DNA of 64,000 nucleotides from Zygnema circumcarinatum SAG 698-1b (GCA_037447605.1 CM074808.1:2294001-2358000); one strand, 5' to 3'. Counted from the first letter of the stretch, positions 8,134 through 44,661 are shown. Numbers and translations: made by a program. Notes: a model not told the origin generated them from the letters alone.

Positions 8134-11100
8134 TTATTGGTAAGGGCGGAAGTACTTGTAGAGATCTTCAGGCCGGCAGCGCTGCCCTGGTTCTAAAACT
8201 AATCGCAGCACCACCCCTGAAGCCAGCCGTGTCCTCACCCTCGATGGATGCAAAATACGGGCTAGAATCTCCACACCATCAACCAGGCGAGGGCCCGGCC
8301 TGCTGAAATAGGAATGATCGCAAACAAACACACGTCCCGTCTGGACAGCAGGCAAGGACCAGAAGCCCGGAAGGTTGGCGACGTACTTTACCTGAAAACA
8401 AAATCATTTTTAAAGCCATACGTTCAGTAGCAGCCCAACACACGTTGATCAATGTCAATCAAGGCGAGTTCATTCAGCAACACACGCTCAAGAGCAAAGT
8501 GAACGCCAAAAAGACCTCCCACCTGTCAGATCTACTTCGACAATCTCTCACCTGAGGATGAAAACGACAGCTCGACTGACTCCTGCTCACCTCTGTCAGA
8601 GTGCGTTGCAGGTTGGACGAACAGGGTGCCAACAATAATACTTCCGGCGCGTAGGCTGTTACCCTTTCCCACGTCACCTTCTCTGCCCCACTGCCAGGTT
8701 CTTGTAGCCCATCGATACCACCCGCCATGGCTTTCATCTCTGGTAACCAATGACCACCCGTCACCATCGGACAGAGCCCCTCCAGAGAAAGCACCCTCTG
8801 GCGAGGCTCACCGGCCACTGAGCGGGCCAAATGTCGCAGCCTCTTGCGGAGCTGCTCCACAAGAGTAAACGCCCGGGCTGCTAGACCCACTCCTTCGCCG
8901 ACAGAGATAATGGAATCCAGGACCTCTGACATCTACAATCACCAGGAGTCACGCAATCCAGTCAGTCCCAAGGGCCATAAGGACAATCAATGATATGCAG
9001 GGATACTGTTGTCCTCAACGTTTCGTTCATTCTGACGATCTTCTTGATTGGCTGGAAGTAAGCTGACCACATATCAGCATACTTGTGAAATAAATTGTAT
9101 TCTGCTAGTTTCACATGGGTTAAAAACGCTTTTCACTTTCACTTCTGCACTGAATCTTGGAAAACTTGAACCTCAGTTGGATAGCCCATACCAAAGCTTC
9201 GGCAGCTAAATGTTCATGATGTGAATATAGCAGAGCTACCCACCGTGTGCGGTCTAAGCACCATCAGGTCTATGTTAGGGCTGTCAATCAGATCCGCCTT
9301 GGCCAATGCATTGGCTACATCACTTTTATCCACATCGCAGCGTGAGCACGTATCCTGCAGCCTCATTAAAACACAGCTTCTTTAAGTATCTCAGCATATC
9401 TGTAGACTCATTCAAGGGACAAACATAACCTGACAGACATCATTTAGAGCATATACAGAATAAATTTCTGCATTCGATGACACCTCACATCAACACTGAG
9501 ATTCCACAATGGTTACCATTTAACCAGCTTCAGATCTGCTTCCATCTACTTTATCCCCCTCTTCCTCCACCTTTGCTTAAAAAATTTGAAATACAGGTCA
9601 TGGAACCCCGTTACCCAGGTCCAGATGCTTCCACATAGATTCAAAACTGTGAATAACAAAAATACACAGCCCAAACCTTGCTGTCTTGCAGCTCGTTACT
9701 TTCAACAATGCAAGCAGAAATACAGATATGGAGTTCCTCTATTACTTGCTAGATTGGATTCAACGCTTCAAGAGTACGCTTCACATGAACGATTTTCCAC
9801 GGGGGGGCGACTGCAGCGTCCACTACATGACGCTTCATTCTGCAAGGCTTCTTCATACTGTTTTGATTGCATCCTAAGACGTACTAAAGAAACACGATCA
9901 GGTGATGAAACACCCTCTCGATTTCACTCATGATAGATGGCTGATCTCGAAAATAAAGATGTAACGCTAACGGCGAGACCAAAGTCTAACCCCAGCCAAT
10001 TGAACTACATTCATCTCGCAGGTTCTAAACGCAATTAAATCGCTTATTTTCAATGGGAAAATATGCAATATTCCACCGATCAACTTCACTGCCGTGAATT
10101 GAGACTAATGACTTCGACCACTTCGGAACTAGGAGATCACATCAGCATTTGGACGATTACCAATTCTTCACACTCCAATTAGGGTTTAGTCATACCCCAC
10201 ATAGTTGACGTGACTCAAGCTTAACTTTGAGCAGAGAAATTTTAGCGAAAAAGATTGCATAGTTCTTGTCAGGCATTACTTGCAAGCAGCAAGTAAAGCT
10301 ACTCACCTGTGTGAACACCAGGTCTGGCTGAATCATGCGTAGGAGGCCTGCGTCCACCTCGTATGGACTCTCGCCCCTTTCTTGAAACCGCTTCATCTAC
10401 ATTTCAGCCCTCAAAAGTGACTTTAAGTTTGTAATTCAGGCCTCAAACTGCCCACCTGACATGAACCAGAACCCAATCCTGCCGCATTTCGAAATAGAAA
10501 GAGGAAATTGGATGCACGACCCTTGGTCGATAAAATTGTGAGCAACAAATATAAGGTGAAAGGAGAAACGGCAACAACTCAGAGATAAAAAGCAGACCAA
10601 AGGAACTCAACCAAGTCCCACAAACGGAGTCAGGAATGCCACATAAGGCTGTCTATGTTCCTGCAGTCCACCTCAACACAAAAAGAGGAGAAAAACTGGC
10701 GTTATGGGCCTACCGCGACCTCCACCTCTTTGCTTGACATGACCGCCGTGTCGATCTTGCTTCTGCTCACCTGTCCAACCCCGCCACGTGGAGAATCAAT
10801 GGCCCGTTCATTGGCCAGCAACGGCACAGACACTAGCAACGATTATTCAAGAAAGAAGGCCAGACACGAATAGTCACGACTTCATTTCGTTGTCCAAAAA
10901 CCAGTTGCATTTGCAGTGTACGCAGACAAGTTCAGAATAGCTTTGACACTGCACCAAATGACTCTCACCTTTGCACTTCATTAGTTTCAATCGCCATTAG
11001 CAGAAGTGAAGACCCTAAATCCTCAGTCCTAGCCTCTAAAAGCCCAACCCTACATCCTGAACTTCTAAAGCTTAAATCTTTCACCCTAAACCCTAATCCC

Positions 11101-13130
11101 GAAAACCTAACCGCTAAACCCTAAACCCTAAACTCTAACCTATGCCACCTAACACCTAACCCCTGAAACCTAAACCCTAACTCCTTGACTCTGCGAAACC
11201 TGACCACTAAACCCTGAACCCTAGCTGCTATAACCTAGACCATGGAACTTAGACCCTAACCCGTATCCCCTAACCCCTACAACCTTCATTACACCCCACA
11301 CCCTACACCCTACTCCCTACCACCCTCAACCTTCAACCCTGAACCATAACCCCTACACCTTAACCACTGAACCCTAACTCCTCAAACCTACACCCTGCAC
11401 CATAATCCCTAAATTCTAAACTCTAAACCCTGCACCCTACACGCTATCCCTAAACCCAACGCTTAACCCCTCATCCCAAAACCTTAACCTGGCACCTTAA
11501 ACCCTAAACCATTAACACCACAAACCCTACACCCTACACCCTGGGCTACTAAACTCTAGACCCTAAACCCTAAACCCACACCCTGAAGCTTAAACCTTAA
11601 CCCTTACACCCTACACCCTCACCCCTCAACCCTACACTGAAAAAAACAAAAACAAAAAAAACTTAAAAACCCGCACCCTGAAGCCTAAACCAGCATCCCT
11701 GACGCAAAACACTCAATCCTCAACCCTACACCCCTCACCCCAACTCGCACCCAAACCCTAACGCCAAAACCCCACCTTGAAGCCCGCAACTCAAACCCTA
11801 AACTCTAAACCCTAAAACCTAAGCCCTAAACCTTGAGCCATAACCCCCTAAACCCTCAAACCTAAACCCGCAACCCTGAACCCTGAACCCTCAACCACGT
11901 GATTCGCGGAAAAAATTCAGATCCCGCTGGTTCCACAAAGATGACCAGAAACAGGTGAGCTGTATGCAGTCTTGCAGTCTGCAGGGACGTAACCTTAAGG
12001 AGACGGCTCCGTAAAGGACAACTAAGAAGGTTCATGCGCCTTGAAACGGACAGAACAACTGCACTTCTGTCAGAATCAAGTGCATGCGCGAGGAGAGAAA
12101 GGCTCTTGCATACCATAATGAAGGCAAGGGCCTCGCAAGAGCGGAAACTGACAAGACCTGACAAGACCTGACAAGACCTGACAGGACCAGACAGTCGCAT
12201 CAGAAGGTGGATTTCTTCAGTAATAAGCGATGGACTACATGGCCAACGCCATCCTAACAAACCCGGAGCCCAACATCCAGCCAATTTTTCTAGAGTGCTA
12301 TGTTGGTAATTGAAAACCAATTCAACAGGGTTCCTGGGTTCGACGACTCTCGCTAAATTCAGAGACTTGCGTAATGTTTTGAACCTTCAACATTACAATG
12401 AGACAACGATCAAGATGTCCAACGACTAGTTCAACGCACACCCATAAATAGAGTTTATGCCATGAATTGGCCTAAAAAGAAATTAGAGTTTAGTCCAACA
12501 GCCGTTGGAACAGGGCTCCAATTTCCTACTAACCGGAAAAATTCAATGCTGCTGTTAGTTGGACATGATGCAAGTACAGAGATGGTGATTTACTTTGCAA
12601 TCACTACGTGACTCCCACTTTGCAGCAACTAGCATCTACTACAGCCGATACTCTGAGACTTATAACGCGCCTGGAGCCTCACAGCTTGTGAAGGGAAAGA
12701 AAAAAAGTAGCTAAGGGTGGATAAAATTCTATCTGCTTACCAATTGCCGTCCCTTCCTTATGTCCTTTGGATAGTCACATAGATCAGAAATTCCCACCAA
12801 CCGTTCTCCAACCCCTGCAGCATTTTTGCAAAAGTCAAACTGAACTTCAAACACGATTGTTCATGGTTCTGGTGCCAGTAGGGCATGATATGAATACAGA
12901 GACATTCGGAAGCTCGTCAGAGATTCTATCCACTACAAGCTGCAGATCCTGGAGCCCTACCCTTTTCCACCGACTTCCTTGCAATCAACAAACTGAGAAA
13001 AATGAATAACACATGAGTGCAGTGCCTTTACAACAACAATGACTGCCGTTGAGCGTTCATCAAGAGCACATAGCACTCACCAAGCTCCATTAGAATTTCT
13101 GTCGCTGATGGCAGCAACGATATGATTCGC
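8134..13130 (-). other. BtuF/TroA-like (periplasmic-binding-fold) cobalamin-binding domain region of the fusion gene, end of exon 9 to exon 15
   Basis: Motif order matches the bacterial 'cobalamin-binding protein' ABC substrate-binding family, from [11 protein letters not shown] to [18 protein letters not shown]. Ligand identity is inferred from family and from the fusion partner. Confidence 0.8.
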
Positions 13131-16100
13131 ACAGGAACTGGGGGATACTCCAATGATGTGATGGGAAAAGCTCGACCATTGCTGGAGCCTCCTTGAGCTC
13201 GGTCCATAACACCGGTGCCAGGACCCATATATGCAACATTGCCCTCTTTTCGACCAGGCATTCCTGAACTCGATGTGAAGCCATTTTTTCGCTCACGTTG
13301 CACCCTTCCCTTGCTTGTGCTAACCCACTCTTCAGGCGAGGATGGCGGACCCTTCCATGCATGTCCTTCCCATGGCTCTCCTGCATCTGAGGAAGAAGGT
13401 GTGTCCAGATCATCAGATAGTGTGCGACCATTCTCTAGATGATCCCTATATCGACCTTCTTCTTTACTACCACTACCATCCCCAATTCTAAACTGGACTG
13501 CAGAACCTTCTCGTCCCGTATAGGGCCTGCTGACTTCTCGTGATGGTGTACCAAACTTATGTTGCTCAGCTTCCCCTAAGCTCTGAAAACTTGAACTATG
13601 GTGCCCATTAGTAATTGTGCGCTCAATTCCGGTGCTCTGCACATCTTCGTCTGATGACGTTTTGCTGTCAGGACTGCCCCATTCCCCTGAATTTCCATTC
13701 CTCCCATCGGGACTGTCAGCCCTGCCCGTAATTGAGTTCCTCTTGCCCCTCCTACGATTCTGAAGCGAACCCCAATATTCTGACATTGAACGGCGGATGC
13801 CTTTTCCACTAGTCAGGCTTGTAGGCCTCTTCACTGGAAAGGGCTCCATGGAATCGGCTCGCGGAAATAAAGGCCGTGCCACCTTATCACCCTTCTCCTG
13901 ACCGTTCCAATCCCATGAGTTGCTTCCTCCTGTCCTCTCCCCCGCTGGAGAGGCAGATCCACGGAACTCCCACCTATTGCTCTCGCTTCGCCTTCGTGCA
14001 TCCCAGGAAGGTGCAGCTAAAGATGATGGACCAACCGGCAATCTCCATATGTCTCGCTCTTCCTCATCTGAACCTGCAACACTCCATGACTCTCCTAGCG
14101 CGTCTGTGACTGCAGCAGCTGCCGCTGCGCCTGCAGCTGCTGCTGCCATCGGCCCAGAATCTGCTACAGCAGATGCTGATGCCGCTGCAACTGCAGCCGC
14201 CTTTGAGGTGTCCTCTCTGCATGATGCCCGAACAACAACTAATTATTCGAATACGATATGATAGAAGGTGTCAAATTAAACGTAGTGCAGCAGGTATCAC
14301 CATCTCGAATTGGACAGGCCAACAGACTGAAAAATACATTTACCTGCATCGTTCAACAAGGGCATGTGCGGCAGCCGGATTAGACCCAAAGTGAAGGTGC
14401 ACATAAGAAGCTAACACAGCGCCAACAACGTAGCCGCCCTCATCCAGATTCGTGCTGGCCCCCACAACCTGCATATCAAACCTGCCAAACTCCACAGTGT
14501 CGCGGACAGGTCAATCTATGCCAAGAAAGGTCAGCCACGTCTCCATGTACTGTTGATCTAATAATGCAATTTCAAGTTGACAGCATGTGAAATATTGCAC
14601 AAATGAATTTTTTGCATCCAAATTGGGATACTATCGCTGTTCTTTTCCTTCTGTCAGCAATAGCGTGCTTGCTGAGAGGATGAATCAAAAAATCGCACAC
14701 ACGTATTCCTCATTGTACGGGCTTCAACCAAGCAAACAAATAGAAACAACAAGGCTTGGATCTTTCAGCAGAAGTTCAGTCGCTCTAGGTGTTTAAAGTC
14801 TTCAGCCTCATGTTCTAAAACCACCCAATTTAACTCTAATCAATAATGTCCTCTATCCATTCTGTCGCACATAGTCACCTCGAGCGGCAGATATCTCTGG
14901 GCGGGCTCCCAATAGACAAGAATAGATTGGTGGCATGATACAGGCTCTATAGTTAAAACATGGCCCTCCGATGATCCTTTGACTTTACCCTATATTTGAA
15001 ATTCAGGCCAAAACCTGGATGGAATTCCTCAGCCCATCTCAATTGTCTTGAAAGTGGTTTGCACTCACCCTGCCTCTGGAACACAATCGCCGACCTCCGT
15101 CGTAGCCTCCGGAGGAATCACTTCACTGAAGTGAAATATTTGCCCCCGGATCTCCCCTATCTCGGGAGGGAAAATACTGTTACTTTCCTTCGGTGTCACC
15201 TGCATGAAGAGCCGCAGAGCTCACACAATATCTCAGAGAAAGCCTTCTCCTTCATGCTCGTCGACTCCGCTATCAAAAAGATGATAGCATGTCCATCCCA
15301 CTAAATCTGTCTCCCCGAAATAAAAGAGTTGCGTCCTGGTACTAACGTTAACATCTCAGCCTTCTATACGGTTGTGCCAAAACCTCATTTCAATATGCTC
15401 ACTATAGCTATGACTATATAGCTATACTATAGCTATAACTAAGCTATCATCTATCCTAGCATGTCGAAAAGCAACTGAGGAGGCATAGGGGAACGAGCCC
15501 ATTAAACATCTCAAATTACTTTGATGTGTTTAGTTGAGGAATAGGCACCAAACAATGTAAAAAGGTGCATCGTGCCATACAGTGATATAAGCTAGCTTCA
15601 TTTTTGAAACCATACGTGTCCAGAAAGGGAACACTCCACACATTGCGAAGCGCTGCCCATCTCTTGTCTGCAATACAACAAGACACGCGACAATGAAATT
15701 GCATTCCATTTCAGGGACTTCTAAGCTTCACAAACCCATCTGCGTAGTAGATCATTTGGCTTTCTCGAGCTACAGTTATACAAGCTACCAGTGTGCTATA
15801 GAAAAGCCTTGCGTATACTGTTGAAAGAAGTAAGTCGAGTTGTCGGCATTTAACGACCAGAGAAAGTGTTCATCTTTCATACAGATATTCACTCTGAACA
15901 AATGAAGGTCTTTGAATACGGCAGAAGTTGGCCAGTTTATCCACTTACGAAGATTTCCCATCATCAATAGTTTGGCCAAAGGTGTAGGTTCTCTTCATCA
16001 TGGAGCTCTGATCAGCACAAACACTTAGATAGAAGGGTATGAAACGGACCTCAATTCCTTGCGAGAGGTACATGAGGCCTCCACACTCGCCGTATATTAT

Positions 16101-19100
16101 TCCCCCTGCAGCTGCAAAAGCTCGCATGGCATACAGCATGCGAGTATTCTCCGCAAGTTTTTTGCCATGAAGCTCTGGATAACCGCCTCCTAGGTAGACA
16201 GCATCCAGTCGTGGAGGAAGCGCATCGTGCAATGGAGAGAAGAATACCAGTTCGGCACCCGCATCTGACCAGCATGTCTCCCCAACATCCCGTTATTAAG
16301 TAGAGAAACAGCCATTTGGTCCATATTCTACCGACTGCAATACTATTGACACTTGCCTCCAACGCCTTTAACTGATGGCGGTGTCTGGCATCTTCAGCAA
16401 GGCATTTCATGCAAAGTCCGGATTTGAGATGCTTTAAAGACATCCTCTAACACTGGCATCCTGCCCACGCCTCTTATCCACTGAACCAGGGGCAAGACAT
16501 GTTTTTGATTGCCAAGGAATGCCCTTCATACCACAAGGTTATGCATTCAATTTAGACACTTTTCCAGTTGTACTCACCTTTCAATAGAGCAAGATTCTCG
16601 TGGTAGTAAAAACAAAAGGCGGCATCTCGCGCTATTCCGATCCGTACCAGCTTCCCAATAGCAAGGGGTAAAGGAACTGCAGCTGTTACTGGCATTGCCT
16701 CTTCGTCACCTCCTCTGTCTTCTCCACAATCACCTTCACTGCCTTCGGGTTTCGACTCGTCTTTCGACAACAATGGAATCGATGGTACCACTTCAGCTGC
16801 CTGGTCCAAAATGCTCTCAAGGTCAATGTACTTCTCCATAAGGTCTGCCAACTTGTCTATAAGGCCCTCTGGCACGCTATCTTCCCCAGGCATGCAGAGG
16901 CCCAAGTGGCGTTCCGGAACTTCTAATCCAGGTGTCTTTGGTAATCCTCCGTACACCCTAGCTGTGGCATTGCTGCCTTCCATTGCATCTTTCAGCCACT
17001 TCAGATGGGTTAAGCTCCCAACCTGCAACTTTAAAACGTTTTAGTAATAATACCAATTTAATGGGCAAAGTCGTAGTAAAGTTGACGATGCATCAAAGGG
17101 AGTGTAATCCTTCTCCTAAAGTTGGATTGCAATAATAGCTATTGTCATATCAGAAATAACTGTCTGCAAACAGTGTGTTGTAAACATAGACTTCTGCAGT
17201 TCAATGTTCTGTATCCAGTTCACGAATCACCGCCACTACACAATAAGTTGCGTCCTAATCCCAAAATACAGTAAATCCTCATAGAAGCATCTTCGGTTGC
17301 TAAATCCACCCTTGATATATAGGTGCCTGGGACAGTGGTGTAGTTTCTATAATGAGAGAGCATCTCCTCCCGTACGGTTGCCAGTGCTGATTCAGACCTA
17401 AAAGCTATGAGAAACTAAACACGACTTGATGTAAAAATCAAGCTGTTCCATAGGTGCTACTCTGTTTCTGCCCAAACGTCTAGGGCTGAGACAAATATGA
17501 CCTTTGGGCATTAGTTATATGGCTCTCTATGATGATGGAGAGCAGAGATTCTGACGTCTGCCTTTTCTGTGACGGAGAAACAATTGCAGTATGCGAAAAG
17601 GCAGTTTTGCTGATTTCAACTGTCACGAGCAAGGTTTTCTATTTCTCATGCGCCCCGCAATGCATACCTTGTTGAATATGACGCCGGCAATTTTTAGCTC
17701 CGGATCAAAAGAGGCGTATCCATGCACCATAGCTGCTGCACTACGAGCCATTGCTGCTGCATCCAAGACCAGGAGGACGGGTGCCCCAAGAATCTTGGCC
17801 ATTTCAGCTGTGCTACCCGTTTCTGACATTCCGTCGCTCCCATCAAAAAGACCCATGACTCCCTCCACAATGGCAATGTCCGTGCTCTCATGATTGCGCC
17901 AAAAGCACTGCAGATTCACTTCCCTGTTCCCTTCAAGCCAACAGTGCACTCAGATTTGTGAGTGCTCGGCAGGAAGAAGGGTGGTGATGACTGGCAACGA
18001 AAGCAGAGTAATTAAAAAAAAAAAAAACGAATAGAATTGAGCAAAGTAAAACATTGAAATTGAGCTCCACCGCACAGCCATAAACTAGCCTAACGTGGTA
18101 CAGCCGTATACAGCAGACACTTGCCAATACCACCGTAAGAAACGCTCTAGAGATGATACAACGTGCCATGGGCACTGTCGACATGCGAAGCACCCTTGCC
18201 TCTCATCATGTTGAGCAGGAGAAATCTTGTGAGGCCCTCATGGTCAGTTTCAGCGTGGCTTTGAACTGAAGAACAAAGAATAAATTACACCTACACGGTT
18301 ACAGCCATCAAATCACGGAGACTAAACTGCCAATGCAGGCACCTGCGGGGGTACTATGCACTGTCAACAGTCCTGAAGCTACTTTTGCTCAATATGTTCC
18401 TTCCGTGTGACTTGGCGCGGCTCTACACATTTCAGATGGATGAACACCGACTTGCATGTGCTACTCAAAGATGCTGCAGAAAGCTCGGCAATAACGGCGG
18501 TGATAAATATTTCTGAAAAAAATAAAGAAAAGCTTCCCCGGTACATTTTGAAGGACCCCGGGAAACTACACAATCCTCAAGGTCCTTGTTTCCACACCTG
18601 GACAACATCCAACCATCCAAGTTGACTGATTCTCGGCCTGAAGCAGCCTTATGGTGCATTGGATCCAAAAAATCTGCACAAAATATTTAGCCCGCCGTCA
18701 AATATTCAAATTTCTTCAGTAAAACATTGTCCATGCTTTGAAAGACACTCAAGTATGCGCCGCAGGTGATAAAGATCAATCTCCCTTGCGTTCACCTTGC
18801 AAATACTACATGCTATTGGCAATGATGCACACTTTGGAACGCGGCAAGCATTCCCAGGTTCGATAACTTCAGCCTGAATGCAGCCAGAAGCTAAACGTTG
18901 GAGACTGGGCAAAACAAAGGTAAATCAACTATACAGTGAAATTCGCAACTACAGTTGCAAAATCAGCGATCATGTTTCTAGAGAATCGAAGTAGAGTTAC
19001 TTTGCAACTAACCTTACTCGCACTCTGGGAGTCACAAGCACACCGTAATAGTCAGCTTCTTAAAAATTACTAACTCTCCCTCTAGTAGGAACTTGGTACT

Positions 19101-19382
19101 TATGCAGTGATAACGCAGACAACAATTGCTAAATAAAAATTCTTGAATACCTCTGCATAGCAATGCAAACTCCAGAAAGACTTCGAACTGTCTTCTAAGC
19201 TTGGGAAACAACTGATGCGGCGCACGGATTATGTGCAGGAAGTAGAACAATTGGAGCTCACCAGGGCCAACCTTAAAGGGTTGTACTCGCAGGCCACGAC
19301 GACGAAACGCTGCCATCAGTCCAATGGCAACGAACGTCTTTCCTACACCACTGTGAGTCCCGCCAACGACTATGCTCTTCAT
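8134..19382 (-). CDS. cbiA: Fusion protein (~1178 aa): cobyrinate a,c-diamide synthase (CbiA/CobB) + low-complexity linker + BtuF/TroA-like cobalamin-binding domain. 15 exons: 19382-19262, 18673-18598, 17923-17668, 17022-16578, 16264-16050, 15667-15581, 15199-15069, 14481-14344, 14216-13081, 12814-12741, 10770-10714, 10396-10307, 9354-9244, 8932-8591, 8391-8134
   Basis: All 14 introns are GT-AG and phase-compatible; summed CDS is 3537 nt. CbiA motifs: [11 protein letters not shown]-loop, [68 protein letters not shown]. BtuF-like motifs: [79 protein letters not shown]. Confidence 0.85.
11012..11894 (+). repeat. Degenerate interstitial telomere-like array (CCCTAAA/TTTAGGG family) within intron 10 of the cbiA fusion gene
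   Basis: Dozens of CCCTAAA, CCCTGAA, CCCTACA and CCTTAA units, with short perfect runs such as AAACCCTAAACCCTAAACTCTAA and GACCCTAAACCCTAAACCC. Confidence 0.85.
14344..19382 (-). other. cobB: CbiA/CobB (ATP-dependent, glutamine amidotransferase) domain region of the fusion gene, ~490 aa, exons 1-8
   Basis: Full-length N-terminal synthetase domain plus C-terminal CobB-type GATase domain with nucleophile Cys in GECGG and the YxHxH His motif. Confidence 0.92.
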
Positions 19383-19979
19383 TGCTCCCTCCGTGTATCC
19401 TAGCTTTGAACAAAGAAAATTAGTGTTCTCGTCTACTTTGCAACTCTTTCGGAGCGTATACCAGCCTCAACTCTTCAAAGCAGTTGATGGCCAGCGACCT
19501 CCCTCAACGTTGACGAGCTGACAAAATTTCATTCAGACAACCAATTCTGCGAAACGGCAATGCGGAGCCTGCCAAGTCTGTCATTGCTTGGGCTACACCA
19601 AGTTTGCCCGGCTGAGCTCATCCATCTCCTCCCAGCATCCCCGCGATGCATACAGTTACATCATCAGATGTCGGATGACATCCCTTCCAAACACCTTCCT
19701 CCTTCCCTTCCAACCTCCTGGCGAGTGAGCGCGTAGGGGAGCCAAGCCACGCCGGGCGGGTCTCTCTCCAGGTGCAAGCGGCGCGAGTGGCAGCAGCAAA
19801 CCCTAGCACCGGCGCCGGCCAGCCACGTGGCGGGCCGGGAGGCGAGGAGGGGCGCAGGGCCGGGTAGGACACTAGGGCAGGGCCGGGGCTGGGGCAGGGG
19901 CAGGGCAAGGCGGGGCGGGGGGGCGCCTGCGCGGCCGCCACGTGCGGGGGCGCGCGCGCCGATATTTGGAGGGGGGGGG

Positions 19980-19989
19980 NNNNNNNNNN
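19980..19989. other. Assembly gap (10 N) between a poly-G run and a poly-C run
   Basis: Seen directly. Confidence 0.99.
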
Positions 19990-20021
<32 letters not shown>

Positions 20022-20141
20022 CATCGCATGGCATGGCATGGCATGGAGTGGCGTTGGGAAGGGGGACGTTCAGTGTACGGTAGTGTCGAAATCGCGTACT
20101 GTGCCGTTATCAGTGAAACATTCACGAGCAGTTCATAGCAA

Positions 20142-22602: not shown

Positions 22603-25600
22603 ATGGAGAAGACTTCCTATTTGTCGGCCGGGAGGAAGCGGGTGAGGCCAGTCATAACCCTTTTTATTCAGCTATACCTTTCATTAACATTTGCTTCTGA
22701 CATTCCTTTCTTGCTAATTTCGGTTGGAACTATTGATCGTCTCTTTCACCATTCATTCTTGCTGAATCTTGTGTTATGGTGTAACAGCTGGAAGAGTTTC
22801 GCAAAAAGCAGAGTCAGAAATCCAACCCTCCCAGGGTTTCTCAGCCGGAGATTCTAGGGCAAGCTAAACCTGGCGATGCGGCGACTACGGCTTTGTCTTC
22901 CAGCGGGAAATCTCCGAGGAAAGTCGACCAAGCCATTTCCGCTCCCCCTCGCGTTGCAGGCGAGGGGTCAGGTGACGGACGGGAGGAGCTTGTCATTGTT
23001 GACTCCACTACAAGCTCGACCCACTCCACAGTTCCTCCGGAGGTCGGTATTGAGGATACAGTGGCGGAAGAAGCACAGGCCCAGGGCGCCTCCCTTCGTC
23101 ACCTTCTTCGTTCTTCACTGGAAAAACCAGCAGGGCAAAGTCACAACGTCTATATTGACATTGTTTCTGATAGAAATCACGTTTCTGCTGAGGAGACAGA
23201 GCAGAGACTACCTGAGAAAGGGATAGGTAGAGTGGAAGGAATTAAACGCGTTCAATCTTCAAGCAGTATAGAGACGGCTGGACGTCCAGCACCAAGTGCA
23301 CCAAGGGTTCGATCGGAGAGCACCTTATCGACTGAACAGGAGGGTTTTCACACTCCAACAGGGAGTCCAATCGGATCAGATGCAGGAAAAGGGTTTGCTC
23401 ACGGATTTCAAGATCCTGAAGGGCGCTCCGCCAAGTCGTCAGAGGTTCACAGCACCGAGCATCATGATGAGGTAGAAAAACGTCAATTCCTTTGAGTTTC
23501 ACACTTGCGCGCTCTTTCTTGTTCCAGCAAGAGGAGCCATTCCTTGTTTGGTCCTTTCTTATTTGCGATGCGACGCCCTTTTTTATCCGTTTTCAGAGAT
23601 CACTGTGTAGAGGCTGAACCCCTGGCTTGTAGTAGAACCTAAGGTCATCTACAAATATATATACGTATATATATTTTTTTCTGAAGTGAACACAGCGGAT
23701 AGTGGTTGTGCATTAGGAAATATGTTTTAACTTGGTCGGTGTGCAAGGAAATTAATGATGGCTATAGCTGATCCATGCGAAATAGATAAGTCTTTTTGTT
23801 CACACTTACACTAAGCAAAAATATATATGCTGGCATTGCAGTCGCTTTGCAATGAGGCTACCACTTATGTTCAATAAGTTTCATGCCATTGTAATTTGTC
23901 AGTCAAAACACGGCCGTATGTTGCCGGCTTTCGTAGGGTCCTCCAGGCCTGCTTTCCGGGCTAGCTTACTTGCTGTAGGATACTTCTGTACTATCTCGTA
24001 AACTGCTGATACCTTTCAGGTTCAGCAAGATGGTAGCATAGGGTTACATTATAGCTGAGAGGCATGCCACAACTCGCATCCATGCAGGTGTCAGCTTCGC
24101 CCACTGTCACTGACCGAGGACAACTCATGCGGGCGTTGCCTCCCATTCCTTCTCCTCAGCTTGAGGACTTAGCCCTTTTGTCGAGCAAGGAGCATGATGG
24201 CAGTCATAAGTGGTTGACTAGGCGACAGGGTCCCGGTCAGGTAGTTCCTGGTGGCAGCAATGAACCAAGTGCTGGAAACAGCCTCGTTGTTTCCAAGAGC
24301 GGTGGTGAGGTTTGGCCAGAAAAGAAGGATAAGTATGTGGAGCGCCTGGAGGTGAAGGTTTCCGAATTACAACGACGCTTATCGTCTGTCTTGGATATGC
24401 AGCCCAGGGGCTGGACCCAAGATGCCGTGCAAACAGAGATGGAAAGGAAAAGTGAGAGAATTAAATTTTTGGAAAAGGAACTTACTCTTGTGAAGTCGGA
24501 GGGTGCAGTCGGAGAGGGTTTTGGAAGACTCAGGCTGTATACGTCAGGAGAATTGAGGCTTGCTCATTCCAATAGTGCACCAATGATTGTGGATTTAGTT
24601 GAAAGGCACACAACAGAGATGAATGAGCTGAAGCGAGTGTTGAGGGAAAGAGACGAGCGTGTGTCTTTCTTAGAGCGTGACAGACAGGCAGCTTTAGACA
24701 AGTTTAAGCAAGAAGTAAAACTTGAGCAGGACGAAGAGACAAAAAGACTGTTTAGGATGCAGGCAGATATGCAAAAAGCTGCTGTAGAACTGACTAAACA
24801 GGTCTCAACGGCTGCGCAGCGTTACAAGCGGCTGGAGGTTGATAAGTTCAAGCTCGAATCCGATATGGCTGAGAAGGAGGCAGCACTGGAAGGCGAGCGA
24901 AGGAGGAACGAGCGCTTGGAGGAGGAGATGGCCATTGTTCGTGGACAGTACGAGACAATGATGGAAACGGTTGCAGCCCTTCAAGAAGCCCGAGCGAAGG
25001 AAGTGTCCCAAAGGGAAGCATTGGAGATTTCACTGGCAGCAGCTGTCAAGTCGCTGACAGAACGGGAATCTCAACTAGAGTCTCTCCAGGCTGTGGCATC
25101 TGAAGTGAAAACCTTAAGGGAAGAAAATGTGACGGCCGGTGAGGGTTGGAGACAGGCCAAGTCCGCAAATGAACAGAATGAGGGCCTCGTTCAGCAGGTA
25201 CTTCGGTTGCAAGGCTATGTTACAAGCAAAGAGGTTGAAGGAGAGGCTTTAGTAGGGAGATTAAACGAAGCAGAAGCAGCTCTATCAGCCAAAGCAATGG
25301 AGGTGGGTGGTCTAACTGCCCATGTAGAGAAGCTGGAAGATGAGTTCTCCAAACTCTCTGCGGAGCATAATGCTGTGAAAGAGGAGTTAAACCAAACAGA
25401 GCTTAGATTGGGAGGAGTTCGAGAGAAATTGAGCATGGCCGTGAAGAAGGGAAAGGAGGTCGTGCAGCAAAGGGATAATCTGAAACTTGCCCTTGCACAG
25501 AAACAGGCAGAGATAGAGGGCACTGTTACAAGTTGGCACACAGAAAGTGGGAACCTTAGACAAGAACTGGAGAAAAAACAGGAGGCTTTAGATGCTGCAG

Positions 25601-28600
25601 TGAAGCAATTAGAAGAGTTGGAGGGTTCAATGACAAGCTTGAGGGATAGAGCAGCTAGTGACTTGTCGAAAATGCGGGAGGACATGCAGTTTAAAATCGA
25701 CCAGAAGGAAGTGTCCGTTGCAGAACTTCAGGCACAACTAGAGGATGCCAACCGAAGGCTGGGTTTCATACAGGGCTTGCTGGTAACAAGTGAAGAAAAA
25801 ATTGCTTCTCTGCATAAGAATGTCCAGGAGTCGGAAGGAAGAACGAATTTGTTAAAGGAGGAGTTTACTGCGACAGTCGAAGAACTGCAGAGAGCATTAT
25901 CGGAAACACAGGATAAGGCAAGTTCCTTCGAAACAAGGCTGGCCGCTGAAGAGGACAATGTTCGAAAACTGCAAGAGGCTGAAAGGGCGAAGAGCAGCTC
26001 ACTTGCAGGAGCTCTGCATGGTCTGACTTTGGCAGAGAAACAATTAGTTGAGGCCACTGAAAAAGCACAGGCTTTGCAAGCGAAATGTTCCTGCTTGGAC
26101 AGTGCTTTAAAGCACGCTGAAAGCCAAGGTGCATTAGCCGTGAAAGAGTATGAGACGGAAATGACAAGACTGCACGGCTTGAACACGGCTTTGGAAAAAA
26201 AGGTGCAGTCTCTCGAGGCCTGCCTTTCAGATGCTGATAGGAAAGCTTCAGTGCTAGAAGCAGAGACGGCAGAAGTTCGCAGTCGGTTTAGTGCGGTTTC
26301 CATCCAGGCGGACGGGGCAAAGAATGTAGCAAATGAGTTGGAACGAGAGCTAACAGAAGCGAGGCAAAAGGGCAGAGAACTTTCTGACGAGCTCAATGAT
26401 GCAAAACAGGAACTGGCAAGGCTTTTAGAGCAAGCAACCCTGGATGCGGCCAATCTAGCAAATACAGAAAAAATGTTAAGGGAAGCACGAAACCGCGAAC
26501 AGAATTTCTCTAGAGAGGTTGACCAAACAACTAGGAAGTTAGTGGACGTAATGGAGAAGATGTCGAAAAGTGATAGAACAGCTCAACTGGTTTCCGCAGA
26601 GGCTCAGGATCTTAGCGAAAAACTTCGGCAAGCAGAGTTGACAGCTGAGAGTTGTGCTCTGGAAGCAGAACAATGGAAGGCAGAAGCCAGGCGTTTGAAA
26701 AATGATCTGGAGAAGGCCTCGAGCGAGCTAAGTGATGCTGGACAGAAGATTGCGGCAGCAGTAGCTGAGAGAAATTCGATTGATGAGAGGGTAAGGGATC
26801 TGGAAGACATGGAGAAAAAGCTACTAGCTGTGAGTAATGCAGCACAAGAACAGAGGGGAAGAGCGGACGGATTAGAAGGTGTTCTCACATTGCTTAACGA
26901 GGAAAAAAAATCTCTGGTAAACAGGCTGGAGATGGAAGCACAACGTTGTGAGAAAGCGCTTGATGACCTTCATACGTTACAATTAAAATTGCACGACGGC
27001 AGACTAAGAGAGGAATTGCTTTCTCAGGAAAATGCTGTTGCTGGGAGTAGACTAGAAAGTTTGGAAGCAGATTTGATAAAAGCTAAAGGAGAGGTGCAAA
27101 AAGCTGAAGAACAGGTGGCGAGCTTAGAAAAGGTATTGGTTAACAAAGAAAGGAGGATAGTTGAGCTTGAGACGGAGAAGGGAGAACTTGGTGAGAGGCT
27201 TAGGGATGCGGTCGAGGCTGGAAAGAAGATGGAAGTGGAGAGAGACAGAATTCTGGGCAAGCTCAAGGAGGAAGAGCAGAATAGAGAAGCAGCCGAAAGG
27301 GGAATTGAAGGGTTTTTGCAGGCCAAGATGAGGGCAAACTTGTTGGAAGAGGAATTAAAGAGATTATTGATTGCTGCGGAGACAAGCGATGCAGAGCTGA
27401 AGTCTTCGCGAGCAACGATTGACACGCTTGAATTACACAGAAGGGAGCTGGAAATACAGGTGGACTCCTTGAAACAGGAAAAGGAATGGCTCGTAGCTAC
27501 TCAGTCCGAATTAAAGGACAAAATGGAAGGCCTTGAAAGGAAACTGCAAGCAAGTCAAGAAATGCTGCGTGAGGAGAGAGGGGATATGGAGGCGTTATCT
27601 GAGGAGATGGCCAACTTGCAGCTGACTTTTAAAGAAAGAGTGATTGAGCTAGAATTAGCGGCAGCCCGAGTGAATGCGCTTAGCTCAGAACTAGTTAATG
27701 TCAAGGGTAGTGCAACCAGTAATGAGCAAGCACTCCAGAGCGAGCTGGAAGGGCTGCGTGCAGAGTTGAGAGCTGAGCAGGAGGCAGTACAGTTAGCGAG
27801 AGGTGACAGAGATAAGTTAACGAACGAGGTCAGAGAGTTGCGACAGAGTCTGGCAAATAAGGATGAGGAGTTTTATTTTGTACAGGAAGAATTGACACGA
27901 GAACTAGAGGCCAAAAAGGAAGAGATGCAAGATGAGAAGAAGGTCAACGAGGGATTGCTCCAAGACCTATCAGCCCTTCGCAGGAGGTTTGCAGCTTTGG
28001 AGGCCACAGTAGAAGCTGAGAGGAGTGCAAGTTTGGCGGAAACTGAAGCAAAATTAGAAGGACTTGAAGGGGCAATGGAGGGAGTTCGACGATCGGAGAA
28101 AGAGGTGATGACTTTGAGGGTAAGTTGAAAGCCTACTTCTTCGTGGTCGCACTTGCCCGCGACGGTAAGGAGGGAGGGAGGGAGGAAGGGACTTTCTTGA
28201 ATGCTGAGAGGTTAAAAGCGCCTTATTTTCTTTCTTTCTTATTCCAGATAGCTTTCCCATTGGCGCTCGTCAGCCTCTAAAGTTTGGTCTGGTTTAGTTT
28301 TGTCTTCACCAACCTATTGCTACGGCTTGAAACTAGTTGTGATCAGGGAAAATGGTTGTGTGTTACCTTTTATTGAGATTTGACTTATGTGGTTGTTATA
28401 GTAATGATGAAGTCTAACAGACGTCCTGCAAGCCACGCACACGCTTTTCCATTAATACATGTTCGATCAATTAGTTGCGCCTACCAAAATCAGCATGTCT
28501 AGGTTGCTTCCATACAATGCTTATGGTAATTTATTTATGGTCCATGTACCATAAATCCATGGTGTATGTACGCAGCTTGGCTGTCATGTTCATTTCATAT

Positions 28601-43563: not shown

Positions 43564-44661
43564 ATGGGGGCATACGAGCTGCTTGCAGCCCAGACAGGCG
43601 CTATGTTTAGGTATGGCTGCCAGGTGGAGTACGTTGGCATGGTAGAGGCGGGGAAAGACGATAAGGTTCATAATCTGCAGCTCTGCCACGTGGCGAAACC
43701 AGAAGACTTGTCCCGGATCCACCCTCTGGAAGCAGAAGTGAAGGCAGGCTGCAGAATAGCAGGAGTGAGGAATTCAGCTGACGAAGGTGAAGGGAAGGGC
43801 GTGCACTCTGCGAATCAGGAGGACCGCTTTGAAGAGAAGCGCTCTCTCAGCTCGCAGAGAATGGCGGGAGCTACATTGCCAGCTAGCAGCAGCCCGGGCC
43901 GCCCTCCTGGGCGCGCAAAACTGTCGCTAATGCAGGAATTCATGGCGGGAGAAGACAGCAGCGCCAAGCTATGGCGGAGCATCCTCTACTGCTTGAAACC
44001 CAGCAGAGAAGGGCACCTTCATGGTTCAAAAAAGGGCAGCAGCCGGCCCCTCCTGGGCCCGATTCAAAGGAGCGCGCCGTCCCCGCCTCCTGGCGGGCGC
44101 AGCCTCCTCCCGCCCATGGCTGCGAAGCACGCGGGCAGGAAGACGCTGGTGCTGGACCTGGACGAGACGCTGGTGCACTCCTCCTTCAAGCCCGTGCCCC
44201 GCGCGGACTACGTCCTGCCCGTCGAGATTGAGCAGCGCGTGACGGACGTGTACGTGCTGAAGCGGCCCTGGGTGGACGCCTTCCTGCAGGCGGCGAGCGA
44301 GAGCTTCGAGGTGGTGGTCTTCACCGCGAGCCTCAGAAAGTACGCGGACCCGCTCCTGGACGTGCTGGACAAGTACGGGGCCATCACGCACAGGCTGTTC
44401 CGGGAGTCGTGCTGCTTGTTTGAGGGGAATTATGTCAAGAATCTGGCGGTGCTCGGGAGAAGCCTCAGCAGCACCATCATCATCGATAACAGCCCGCATT
44501 CGTACTTTTTTCATCCTGAAAATGCGCTTCCGATAAGCACATTCATTGACAGCCCTCATGATCGGGAGCTGTTTCAACTCATTCCTTACCTTCGTTCTCT
44601 CGCGGCTTCGACTGACGATGTTCGGGTACTCCTTGGCCGCCTTGATCGCTTTAAATGCTAA
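43564..44661 (+). CDS. SCP1/CTDSP-like small CTD phosphatase (FCP1/NIF HAD family), single exon
   Basis: TLVLDLDETLVHSS (DxDxT nucleophile motif), VLKRPWVD, FEVVVFTAS, YADPLLDVLD, RLFRESC, YVKNL..LGR, IIIDNSPHSY, DRELFQLIPYL. The true start could be a later ATG such as 43861, or upstream across the gap. Confidence 0.92.
   Translation: MGAYELLAAQTGAMFRYGCQVEYVGMVEAGKDDKVHNLQLCHVAKPEDLSRIHPLEAEVKAGCRIAGVRNSADEGEGKGVHSANQEDRFEEKRSLSSQRMAGATLPASSSPGRPPGRAKLSLMQEFMAGEDSSAKLWRSILYCLKPSREGHLHGSKKGSSRPLLGPIQRSAPSPPPGGRSLLPPMAAKHAGRKTLVLDLDETLVHSSFKPVPRADYVLPVEIEQRVTDVYVLKRPWVDAFLQAASESFEVVVFTASLRKYADPLLDVLDKYGAITHRLFRESCCLFEGNYVKNLAVLGRSLSSTIIIDNSPHSYFFHPENALPISTFIDSPHDRELFQLIPYLRSLAASTDDVRVLLGRLDRFKC

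What the first reader, a model, noticed from the sequence alone, without database searches (positions are those of the whole stretch)
8134..19382. Intron-rich eukaryotic gene fusing a cobalamin-biosynthesis amidase (CbiA/CobB) to a BtuF-like corrinoid-binding domain
Seen in sequence: 15 exons with canonical GT-AG sites assemble without frameshift into ~1178 aa. The ORF track shows only scattered fragments. Exon 8 ends ...ALVERC-AG and exon 9 starts A-GAG-GAC, which places the CobB C-terminus in frame with the 373-aa ORF leading into [11 protein letters not shown]. Established knowledge: CbiA/CobB amidates the a and c side chains of cobyrinic/hydrogenobyrinic acid in prokaryotic B12 synthesis. 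BtuF-like proteins are normally secreted ABC substrate-binding proteins. Eukaryotes are not known to synthesise B12 de novo, although many algae use it. Inference: a prokaryote-derived, long-domesticated, probably cytosolic protein (it starts directly with the P-loop domain, with no leader peptide). It may capture incomplete or degraded corrinoids and amidate them (salvage/remodelling), or act as a corrinoid sensor. No other cob/cbi gene lies in the window.
Basis: partly seen in the sequence, partly recalled or inferred. Interest (0 to 1): 0.92.

Follow-up and report, generated by a model that had tools for sequence, protein, structure and literature searches.

The report
Expressed algal CobB–binding-protein fusion gene
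This alga has one expressed, intron-rich gene that joins an intact-looking bacterial-type vitamin-B12-pathway amidating enzyme (CobB) to a cytosolic relative of bacterial B12/heme-binding proteins; many algae, oomycetes and non-seed plants share the fusion, and I found no paper that studies it.

Summary
Fifteen GT-AG exons on the minus strand (19382..8134) give a 3537-nt reading frame of 1178 aa. Spliced RNA contigs from four runs in three studies confirm introns 2-9, including the fusion junction 14344/14216. One 3350-nt contig runs from exon 1 into exon 12.

The N-terminal 490 aa are a CobB/CbiA-type a,c-diamide synthase with every catalytic motif intact. About 360 disordered residues follow, then a Peripla_BP_2 domain without a signal peptide.

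The fusion is not unique. The same architecture occurs in streptophyte algae, liverworts, mosses, lycophytes, a fern, many chlorophytes and a haptophyte. Oomycetes, dinoflagellates and Triparma carry it with added Kelch and DUF5522 domains. The eukaryotic CobB domains form one clade, and the window's copy sits among streptophytes.

Orthologues pass NCBI's CobB equivalog cut-off. The C-domain fails the BtuF cut-off. Its nearest kin are ~300-aa leaderless bacterial and archaeal proteins of unknown role.

In land plants, which lack METH (hornworts excepted), key motifs of both domains decay. They are intact in algae, including this one.

I found no paper describing the protein. The scan has no earlier report of it on other DNA. 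Function is inferred, not shown: amidation of a bound corrinoid-like tetrapyrrole.

The parts
8134..19382 (-). Whole gene: 15 exons, CDS 3537 nt, 1178 aa, all introns GT-AG
   Evidence: Model assembled. Introns 2-9 confirmed by spliced RNA contigs. Remaining junctions supported by colinear alignment with orthologues.
16876..19382 (-). Exons 1-4 (part): ATP-binding P-loop domain of CobB/CbiA (aa 1-200). P-loop [10 protein letters not shown] lies at 19364-19335, GPDFLDP spans intron 1, [11 protein letters not shown] lies at 17871-17839, PERHLGL lies at 16917-16897.
   Evidence: Pfam CbiA and AAA_26. NCBIfam NF002204 is the best hit. Motifs compared with bacterial CobB.
14344..16653 (-). Exons 4 (end) to 8: GATase_3 glutamine amidotransferase domain (aa ~275-490). 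Nucleophile Cys sits in [10 protein letters not shown] at 16094-16065. [11 protein letters not shown] lies at 14408-14376. The CobB homology ends at ALVERC (14363-14346).
   Evidence: Pfam GATase_3, 1.3e-14 on the exon 5 piece. NCBIfam. Motif table.
14217..14343 (-). Intron 8 (127 nt), the fusion junction. If it were retained, the frame reads ...ERCR then TAA, which would give a stand-alone CobB.
   Evidence: Sequence. The joint 14216/14344 is seen in 4 of 4 runs. Depth in bin 14100-14299 equals what exon sequence alone predicts, and no intron-retaining contig was found.
13136..14216 (-). Exon 9, main part: ~360-aa Ser/Gly/Ala/Arg-rich linker (aa 491-850) with no family match. The model predicts it is disordered in an orthologue.
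   Evidence: No Pfam hit. Composition. Uniform RNA depth across it. Linker length and sequence are not conserved among orthologues. Low pLDDT in the linker of the Chlorokybus model.
8221..13135 (-). Exon 9 (end) to exon 15: leaderless Peripla_BP_2 domain (aa 851-1150). Cleft motifs: SLLPSATEI (13132-13094), DLCDYP (12785-12768), [10 protein letters not shown] (spans intron 12), GGHWLPEM (8758-8735), [12 protein letters not shown] (8310-8275).
   Evidence: Pfam Peripla_BP_2 on exon 14. ~40% identity between the Spirogloea orthologue's domain and leaderless prokaryotic proteins, with the window's domain aligning colinearly. AF2 model of the orthologous domain has pLDDT 94.7. Fold matches. Motif table.
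8137..8187 (-). Conserved C-terminal tail [17 protein letters not shown]. Eukaryotic orthologues share it, as do the two closest stand-alone proteins (P0312, P0313).
   Evidence: Alignment. Consensus GQxCRPxxLxxHF in A3. No Pfam match.
11083..11896 (-). Degenerate interstitial telomere-type repeat (TTTAGGG)n inside intron 10. It is not part of the protein.
   Evidence: TRF finds period 7, ~78 and ~15 copies. There are 8 matches to a double unit against 0 expected.

Best explanation
This is one real, expressed nuclear gene of a streptophyte alga. It encodes a probably cytosolic two-domain protein and is an orthologue of a eukaryote-wide family. Shown: the exon structure and the spliced fusion mRNA, the domain identities, the intact catalytic motifs, the wide distribution and the single eukaryotic clade. 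Inferred: the N-terminal domain is an active ATP- and glutamine-dependent amidotransferase of the CobB/CbiA type, which converts the a and c acetate side chains of a corrin-type tetrapyrrole into amides. Also inferred: the C-terminal leaderless periplasmic-binding-protein-like domain, tethered by a long flexible linker, holds the substrate or product in its Cys-lined cleft, or captures it from the uptake route. The organism cannot make B12 but uses it. The most likely job is therefore processing (completion, repair or detoxification) of imported corrinoids that carry free acetate carboxylates, not de novo synthesis.
For: Gene and transcript. CobB identity: NCBIfam CobB is best on the four main CobB exon pieces. 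Orthologues score 369-469 bits against the equivalog cut-off of 254 and fail the CfbB cut-off of 560. The Spirogloea orthologue is 44-49% identical over its full length to bacterial cobyrinate a,c-diamide synthases. The window keeps all but about eight of ~147 positions that are near-invariant in bacteria, including the P-loop, GPDFxDP, EG, PERHLGL, GECGG and HLHF. Coupling of the two domains: the same fusion occurs in more than 30 eukaryotic lineages. One Bathyarchaeia locus has cobB 12 bp upstream of the stand-alone binding-protein gene, next to an ECF S-component and transcobalamin-like pieces. Tetrapyrrole-binder likeness: the best PDB sequence match is Vibrio BtuF at 1.9e-13. The Swiss-Prot structural neighbours are almost all BtuF or archaeal cobalamin binders. 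Link to B12 use: earlier notes report METH and CBA1 in this genome. In land plants, where METH is absent outside hornworts (PMC11439496), the glutaminase Cys is lost in Riccia, Selaginella, Diphasiastrum and P0204, and the cleft motifs of the binding domain decay in all sampled embryophytes. Both are intact in algae.
Against: No activity or ligand was tested. No natural corrinoid with free a/c carboxylates is known to be taken up by algae, and no CobQ, CbiB or other late cob genes were found here. The C-domain fails the BtuF equivalog cut-off. It resembles heme and iron-chelate binders almost as well. Its prokaryotic kin have no conserved neighbourhood, with cobB adjacent in only 1 of 67 loci. 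The same subfamily is also found next to or fused with Dph6-like amidoligase, DCC1 oxidoreductase and GGACT. AF2 gives no fixed interface between the domains (pTM 0.59). The gene has persisted for hundreds of millions of years in METH-less mosses and liverworts, some of which keep the catalytic Cys. Several B12-using algae did not appear among the listed hits, but the list stops at 120 of 779.
Confidence: 0.5

Rival explanations
1. The enzyme is active, but its substrate is not a corrinoid. It may amidate another tetrapyrrole made by the cell itself (sirohydrochlorin/siroheme-type) or another carboxylate. The binding domain would then hold that molecule, or a metal ion through its three conserved cysteines.
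For: The fusion persists in mosses, liverworts, lycophytes and a fern that lack METH. CfbB, a homologue, acts on Ni-sirohydrochlorin, and orthologues score 315-397 bits on that model. Fold matches include heme and metal-chelate binders at similar E-values. The cleft carries C..CxxC plus GHW, which could bind a metal. The prokaryotic subfamily pairs with unrelated amidoligases and with redox or glutamyl enzymes.
Against: Orthologues pass the CobB equivalog cut-off and fail the CfbB cut-off. Motifs decay in exactly the lineages that lost B12 use. No amidated siroheme-type cofactor is known in plants or algae (my own knowledge).
Confidence: 0.25
2. The binding domain is a sensor or regulatory/scaffold module rather than a substrate holder. 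Examples would be a corrinoid or metal sensor that gates the amidotransferase, or one that recruits partners through the linker or through Kelch domains in other lineages.
For: A long disordered linker and no predicted fixed interface. Stramenopile and dinoflagellate versions add a Kelch propeller and DUF5522, which are typical interaction modules. P0048 has PBP-Kelch-DUF5522 without CobB.
Against: Nothing here separates sensing from substrate delivery. Strong conservation of the cleft motifs fits either reading.
Confidence: 0.12
3. The main products are two separate proteins: a stand-alone CobB made by retaining intron 8 (frame reads ERCR-stop), and a binding protein made from an internal start. 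The fusion would be a minor or read-through form.
For: The Chara and Closterium annotations list CobB alone.
Against: All four runs show the spliced joint at full exon depth, and no contig retains the intron. Orthologues in intron-poor picoalgae encode the fusion as one uninterrupted ORF. The Chara models CBR_g32417 and CBR_g32415 lie on the same contig under near-consecutive numbers (same 5,198,144-base longest contig), so they look like one gene annotated in two pieces.
Confidence: 0.04
4. The gene is an evolutionary relic with no catalytic role in this alga.
For: Some land-plant orthologues have lost the glutaminase Cys.
Against: In the window every catalytic and cleft motif is intact. The gene is well expressed and correctly spliced. 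The frame stays open across 15 exons.
Confidence: 0.04

Closest known systems
Bacterial cobyrinate/hydrogenobyrinate a,c-diamide synthase (CbiA/CobB; NCBIfam NF002204, TIGR00379)
   Same: The N-terminal 490 aa have the same two-domain build (P-loop ATPase plus GATase_3). The Spirogloea orthologue is 44-49% identical over its full length. The P-loop, GPDFxDP, EG, PERHLGL, GECGG and HLHF motifs are intact. Orthologues pass the equivalog cut-off.
   Different: It is a nuclear, intron-rich eukaryotic gene. It is fused to a binding domain through a ~360-aa linker. No other cob gene was found nearby. The host cannot synthesise B12. Eukaryote-specific changes include I to L in GPDF[I/L]DP (0 of 19 eukaryotes keep I) and H to Q in RGH.
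BtuF, the periplasmic vitamin B12-binding protein of the BtuCD-F importer
   Same: Same class III periplasmic-binding-protein fold. Vibrio cholerae BtuF is the best PDB sequence match (1.9e-13) and shares the xATEI, DYP, GHWxSE and NRPxPR motif regions. BtuF proteins dominate the Swiss-Prot structural hits.
   Different: No signal peptide. No ABC-transporter partner. An extra ~40-residue helical insert and a C..CxxC cysteine set lie in the cleft. It scores 25.8 bits against the BtuF cut-off of 234. Heme and iron-chelate binders match the fold about as well.
Leaderless ~300-aa bacterial and archaeal Peripla_BP_2 proteins, auto-named 'cobalamin-binding protein' or 'iron complex transport substrate-binding protein'
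   Same: They are the nearest relatives of the C-domain (~40% identity to the Spirogloea orthologue's domain over the full length). They share the insert, HECDYP, LCxVCA, GHW and FSRPGPR motifs and begin directly at [12 protein letters not shown].
   Different: They are stand-alone proteins with heterogeneous gene neighbourhoods. cobB is adjacent in 1 of 67 loci and a Dph6-like gene in 5 of 67. I found no experimental characterisation.
[quoted passage not shown]
   Same: Same CobB-linker-PBP architecture and the same conserved C-terminal tail. The window is 53-60% (N-domain) and 44-55% (C-domain) identical to streptophyte members. It falls in the same clade.
   Different: The window's linker is among the longest. 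Land-plant members show decayed catalytic and cleft motifs, which the window does not. Stramenopile and dinoflagellate members add Kelch and DUF5522.
CfbB, the Ni-sirohydrochlorin a,c-diamide synthase of coenzyme F430 synthesis
   Same: Homologous enzyme performing the same chemistry on a different tetrapyrrole. Orthologues score 315-397 bits on its model.
   Different: The scores are below the 560-bit cut-off, and CobB scores higher in every case.

Membership tests
CobB/CbiA a,c-diamide synthase | N-terminal P-loop ATP-binding domain with GxxSGxGKT | tested here: met
   [10 protein letters not shown] at aa 7-16. Pfam CbiA 5.5e-11.
CobB/CbiA a,c-diamide synthase | Conserved acidic substrate/ATP-site motifs (GPDxxDP, xEG) | tested here: met
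   GPDFLDP and [11 protein letters not shown] are present and align with bacterial CobB. That these residues matter in Salmonella CbiA is from my own memory of the literature.
CobB/CbiA a,c-diamide synthase | GATase_3 domain with nucleophile Cys (GECGG) and the C-terminal HxH motif | tested here: met
   [10 protein letters not shown] and [11 protein letters not shown] are present. Pfam GATase_3 1.3e-14.
CobB/CbiA a,c-diamide synthase | Score above NCBIfam's curated equivalog cut-off (NF002204, 254 bits) | tested here: inconclusive
   The spliced protein could not be submitted as one reference. The pieces score 48, 117, 76 and 74 bits with CobB best on each. Orthologues P0209, P0203, P0205 and P0232 score 369-469 bits, above the cut-off.
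CobB/CbiA a,c-diamide synthase | Catalyses amidation of the a and c acetates of cobyrinic or hydrogenobyrinic acid | not testable with these tools
   Needs an enzyme assay or complementation.
CobB/CbiA a,c-diamide synthase | Works within a cobalamin biosynthetic pathway (other cob/cbi genes present) | tested here: not met
   No other cob-like domain on the largest ORFs of the window. The genome notes mention METH and CBA1 only. Eukaryotes are not known to make B12.
BtuF (vitamin B12 ABC-transporter substrate-binding protein) | Class III periplasmic-binding-protein fold | tested here: met
   AF2 model of the orthologous domain has pLDDT 94.7. Foldseek gives BtuF 5ysc at 3e-16 and 1n2z at 3.5e-13.
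BtuF (vitamin B12 ABC-transporter substrate-binding protein) | Secreted: signal peptide, periplasmic or lipoprotein location | tested here: not met
   The domain is internal to a protein that starts at the P-loop. Its prokaryotic kin start at MRIVSL with no leader.
BtuF (vitamin B12 ABC-transporter substrate-binding protein) | Score above NCBIfam's BtuF equivalog cut-off (NF002894, 234 bits) | tested here: not met
   25.8 bits for P0209 and 35.7 bits for bacterial P0318.
BtuF (vitamin B12 ABC-transporter substrate-binding protein) | Binds cobalamin | not testable with these tools
   Needs binding assays.
Eukaryotic CobB-PBP fusion orthologue group | CbiA + GATase_3 + Peripla_BP_2 on one polypeptide, in that order | tested here: met
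   Window model. Eight of eight long homologues tested share it.
Eukaryotic CobB-PBP fusion orthologue group | CobB domain falls inside the eukaryotic clade | tested here: met
   All 31 eukaryotic rows lie on one side of a branch (SH-aLRT 99). The window falls in a 10-row streptophyte set (99).
CfbB (Ni-sirohydrochlorin a,c-diamide synthase) | Score above NCBIfam's exception cut-off (NF033195, 560 bits) | tested here: not met
   Orthologues score 315-397 bits. On the window pieces CfbB is always below CobB.

The most novel reading that the evidence does not exclude
B12-using eukaryotes have a so far unrecognised cytosolic step of corrinoid metabolism. A CobB-type enzyme, fed by its own tethered corrinoid-holding domain, amidates (completes, repairs or detoxifies) imported corrinoids that carry free a/c acetate carboxylates. 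The module was present early in eukaryotic algae and has been decaying in land plants since they gave up B12-dependent methionine synthase.
Probability: 0.3. Interest if true: 0.85.

Novelty: new member of a known kind. Interest (0 to 1): 0.58.

Why it matters
Eukaryotes are thought only to import, trim and load B12, never to do corrin side-chain chemistry. This family is conserved, expressed and catalytically intact-looking in many B12-using algae, oomycetes and dinoflagellates. If it is active, one clearly defined enzyme step would be added to eukaryotic B12 metabolism. That bears on which corrinoid forms are bioavailable to phytoplankton.

The motif decay in METH-less land plants gives a second, independent marker for the loss of B12 use during plant evolution. 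It complements the 13-protein survey of PMC11439496, which did not include this protein.

The gene itself is not a discovery of this window. Dozens of orthologues already sit in databases under automatic names. The value lies in flagging an uncharacterised family with a directly testable biochemical prediction. Tractable hosts that carry an orthologue include Marchantia, Physcomitrium and probably Ostreococcus.

Tried and rejected
1. Bacterial contamination or a two-gene reading is rejected. Nine of the 14 GT-AG introns are confirmed by spliced contigs, and there is one in-frame junction.

2. I looked for a bacterial version of the fusion and found none. The long environmental homologues P0242 and P0004 lie on contigs with eukaryote-type neighbours (GT29, PP2C, Kelch, ankyrin) and fall in the eukaryotic clade.

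3. I looked for a conserved neighbourhood of the prokaryotic stand-alone binding proteins and found none. This covers three look-ups and 67 GTDB loci. The commonest neighbour family occurs in 7 loci. cobB is adjacent in 1 locus and CobQ lies within 2-4 genes in 2 loci, which is not above chance.

4. The search for related loci with the mixed alignment A1 failed because no stretch was conserved enough. I repeated it with the prokaryote-only alignment A2.

5. The full-length AF2 model of the short-linker Chlorokybus orthologue has well-folded domains but pTM 0.59, so no fixed interface can be claimed. Coordinates are not returned, so I could not test whether the three cysteines cluster.

6. NCBIfam gives the C-domain no equivalog.

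7. Tetraselmis P0293 shows the reverse order (GT8-PBP-CobB). I do not use it as evidence, because it may be a merged model of tandem copies.

8. Seven full-text literature searches and three papers read gave only one passing mention of a CobB-like transcript in Chrysochromulina brevifilum (PMC4057078). Neither B12 paper I checked mentions it.

10. The spliced 1178-aa protein has no reference form, so whole-protein searches were run on exon pieces and on orthologues instead.

Full report
**Observation.** The region holds scattered minus-strand ORF fragments whose translations read like pieces of CobB and of a periplasmic binding protein. I joined them at GT-AG sites and obtained 15 exons (19382..8134), a 3537-nt frame and 1178 aa, ending in TAA. 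Pfam finds CbiA/AAA_26 on exons 1 and 3, GATase_3 on exon 5 and Peripla_BP_2 on exon 14. [quoted passage not shown]

**Transcript evidence.** I laid contigs of four public runs from three studies on 12700-18680.
- They show eight joints with CT..AC ends, which is GT..AG on the minus strand. These fall at my intron boundaries 2-9, allowing for the tool's stated 1-2 nt ambiguity.
- Depth is high on exons (75-216) and 0-27 in introns.
- The fusion joint 14216/14344 is present in all four runs at full exon depth.
- In run X1 a single 3350-nt contig covers exons 2-10. Its loose ends match exon 1 and exon 11.

The mRNA therefore joins both halves in frame. The window aligns with orthologues across these junctions without gaps.

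**Start and location.** The protein starts [16 protein letters not shown], directly at the P-loop. Upstream in frame there is a stop 29 codons before the ATG and no ATG in between. There is no room for a targeting peptide unless an unseen upstream exon exists, so a cytosolic location is the inference.

**Not unique.** An exhaustive HMMER search with exon 14 found 1864 relatives. Among the best 150 were 13 proteins of 749-1445 aa with the match near the C-terminus. Eight of eight that I tested are CbiA + GATase_3 + Peripla_BP_2. Cluster look-ups and a word search with the Riccia orthologue name the following:
- Liverworts: Riccia and Marchantia. [quoted passage not shown]
- Mosses: Physcomitrium and Ceratodon.
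- Lycophytes and a fern: Selaginella, Diphasiastrum and Pteridium.
- Streptophyte algae: Chara, Spirogloea, Chlorokybus and Mesotaenium.
- Chlorophytes: Trebouxia, Myrmecia, Micractinium, Auxenochlorella, Prototheca, Tetraselmis, Chloropicon and Mamiellales.
- A haptophyte: Diacronema/Pavlova lutheri.

Oomycetes (Aphanomyces, Saprolegnia, Achlya), dinoflagellates and Triparma have CobB-PBP-Kelch-DUF5522. The long environmental members lie on contigs with eukaryote-type neighbours. I found no bacterial fusion.

In a maximum-likelihood tree of 31 eukaryotic and 62 prokaryotic CobB domains, all eukaryotes lie on one side of a branch (SH-aLRT 99). The window falls in a streptophyte set with Closterium, Mesotaenium, Chara, Spirogloea and the land plants. 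The window's protein is not identical to anything fetched. Its best matches are 53-60% identical in the N-domain and 44-55% in the C-domain.

**The enzyme half.**
- The Spirogloea orthologue is 44-49% identical over its full length to bacterial cobyrinate a,c-diamide synthases.
- Four orthologues score 369-469 bits on NF002204 (cut-off 254). They score only 315-397 bits on CfbB (cut-off 560).
- Of ~147 columns that are at least 95% conserved in 22 bacterial CobBs, the window differs at about eight. The P-loop, [35 protein letters not shown] and [11 protein letters not shown] are all present.
- No CobB-family structure exists in the PDB by sequence search.

An active a,c-diamide-synthase-type amidotransferase is the natural reading.

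**The binding half.**
- The nearest relatives are ~300-aa prokaryotic proteins, ~40% identical, that begin at [12 protein letters not shown] without a leader. Some are auto-named 'cobalamin-binding protein'.
- They are widespread in Bacteria and Archaea. At least 599 matches were found in species-representative genomes.
- They share with the eukaryotic domain a helical insert and the cleft motifs HECDYP, LCxVCA, GHW and FSRPGPR.
- An AF2 model of the Spirogloea domain is confident (pLDDT 94.7, pTM 0.92).
- By sequence the best solved relative is Vibrio cholerae BtuF (1.9e-13).
- By fold the top matches are 4m7o, BtuF and the heme binders PhuT, ShuT, BhuT and RhuT, within a narrow E-value range.
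- In Swiss-Prot the neighbours are YvrC, many BtuF proteins and the Halobacterium cobalamin binder.
- The domain does not reach any NCBIfam equivalog cut-off. BtuF scores 25.8 bits against a cut-off of 234.

It is therefore BtuF-like in fold and nearest sequence, but not a BtuF. Its ligand is unknown.

**Context of the prokaryotic kin.**
- Three look-ups and 67 loci show no conserved neighbourhood and no ABC permease partner.
- One Bathyarchaeia locus has an Asn-synthase-like gene, then cobB, then 12 bp later the binding-protein gene. These sit beside an ECF S-component, a DUF4430 protein and an alpha/alpha-toroid protein. The last two are weak matches reminiscent of the two halves of transcobalamin.
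- Five loci have a Dph6-like PP-loop amidoligase gene immediately adjacent and co-directional.
- The ESM Atlas lists Dph6-like-PBP and PBP-DUF5522 fusions.
- Other partners are a DCC1 thiol-disulfide oxidoreductase and GGACT.

The recurring link to two unrelated carboxylate-amidating enzymes suggests that the domain presents a substrate for amidation. The variety of partners warns against assuming that the substrate is a corrinoid.

**A pattern that ties the family to B12 use.**
- Earlier notes of this scan report METH and CBA1 in this genome. I did not check them.
- PMC11439496 finds METH in no land plant outside hornworts.
- In my motif tables every alga, including the window, keeps the CobB motifs and the cleft motifs.
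- The glutaminase Cys is replaced in Riccia (G), Selaginella (A), Diphasiastrum (S) and P0204 (S).
- PERHLGL decays in all sampled land plants.
- The aromatic residue of CD[YF]P and the Arg of FSRPGPR are replaced in all sampled embryophytes.
- The CxxC pair is lost in liverworts, Diphasiastrum and Pteridium.

The sample is small and the lineages are related. This is a lead, not a test. It is what relaxed constraint after loss of B12 use would produce.

**Mechanism.**
- Shown: one spliced mRNA, two folded domains and a ~360-aa Ser/Gly/Ala/Arg-rich linker.
- Inferred: the N-domain uses ATP and glutamine to amidate acetate side chains of a corrin-type tetrapyrrole, and the tethered C-domain holds that molecule.
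- AF2 gives no fixed interface (pTM 0.59 with domain pLDDT above 90). That fits a flexible tether.
- The weak point is the substrate. No free a/c-carboxylate corrinoid is known to reach algal cytosol, and the later cob enzymes are missing.
- Repair or detoxification of damaged corrinoids, or another tetrapyrrole altogether, remain open.

**Comparison and novelty.** The N-half meets every sequence-level criterion of CobB/CbiA that I could test. The exception is membership of a cob pathway, which is not met. The C-half has the BtuF fold but fails the secretion and score criteria. The gene is a new member of an existing, automatically annotated eukaryotic orthologue group.

I found no paper that describes the group. 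The only trace is a sentence on a CobB-like transcript in Chrysochromulina brevifilum (PMC4057078). Neither the land-plant B12 survey nor a 2026 preprint on algal B12 uptake and remodelling mentions it. The library does not cover most subscription journals, so a description could exist outside it.

**Verdict.** The claim of an exceptional fusion is not, because the fusion is widespread. The family itself is an attractive, testable unknown.

Noticed in passing
window 11083-11896 (inside intron 10): About 800 bp of degenerate plant-type telomere repeat (TTTAGGG)n lie interstitially in an intron. There are 8 near-perfect double units against 0 expected.
   Followed up: partly
window 24064-28128 and 28743-32042 (+): Two very long open frames (1354 and 1099 aa) have no Pfam match. 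The stretch has strong G>C and A>T skew (GC skew up to 0.32). It may be a giant low-complexity exon or a repeat-derived frame.
   Followed up: partly
window ~19870-20040: Translations of the ORFs here contain runs of X flanked by poly-Gly/poly-Pro. This indicates a short run of N (assembly gap) in a very GC-rich homopolymer tract roughly 0.5 kb upstream of the gene's start.
   Followed up: no
window 43564-44661 (+): ORF with a strong NIF (CTD-like phosphatase) domain, 2.3e-57. It is an unrelated neighbouring gene.
   Followed up: no
L035:2080-7776 (Candidatus Bathyarchaeia contig DASPWY010000153.1): A compact cluster holds an alpha/alpha-toroid protein, a DUF4430 protein and an ECF S-component on one strand. 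On the other strand it holds an Asn-synthase-like gene, cobB and the leaderless binding protein. It may be a corrinoid uptake/processing island. The matches to the first three are weak.
   Followed up: partly
L024, L036, L065, L038, L017 (Acidobacteriota, Ignavibacteriales): A Dph6-like PP-loop amidoligase gene (PF01902) lies directly next to, and co-directional with, the leaderless binding-protein gene. The ESM Atlas also lists fusions of the two, and PBP-DUF5522 proteins in diatoms.
   Followed up: partly
proteins P0222 and P0002 (Chara braunii CBR_g32417 and CBR_g32415): In Chara the CobB half and the binding half are annotated as two genes on the same contig under near-consecutive numbers. 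This is probably one fusion gene split by annotation.
   Followed up: no
proteins P0027, P0030, P0208, P0204 (Riccia, Selaginella, Diphasiastrum, unnamed): These land-plant orthologues have lost the glutaminase nucleophile Cys (GECGG becomes GEGGG, GEAGG, GESAG or GESGG). Marchantia polymorpha and Physcomitrium keep it.
   Followed up: partly
protein P0293 (Tetraselmis striata TSEL_011608): This gene model has the order GT8 - PBP - CobB. It is either a real rearranged fusion or a merged model across tandem copies.
   Followed up: no
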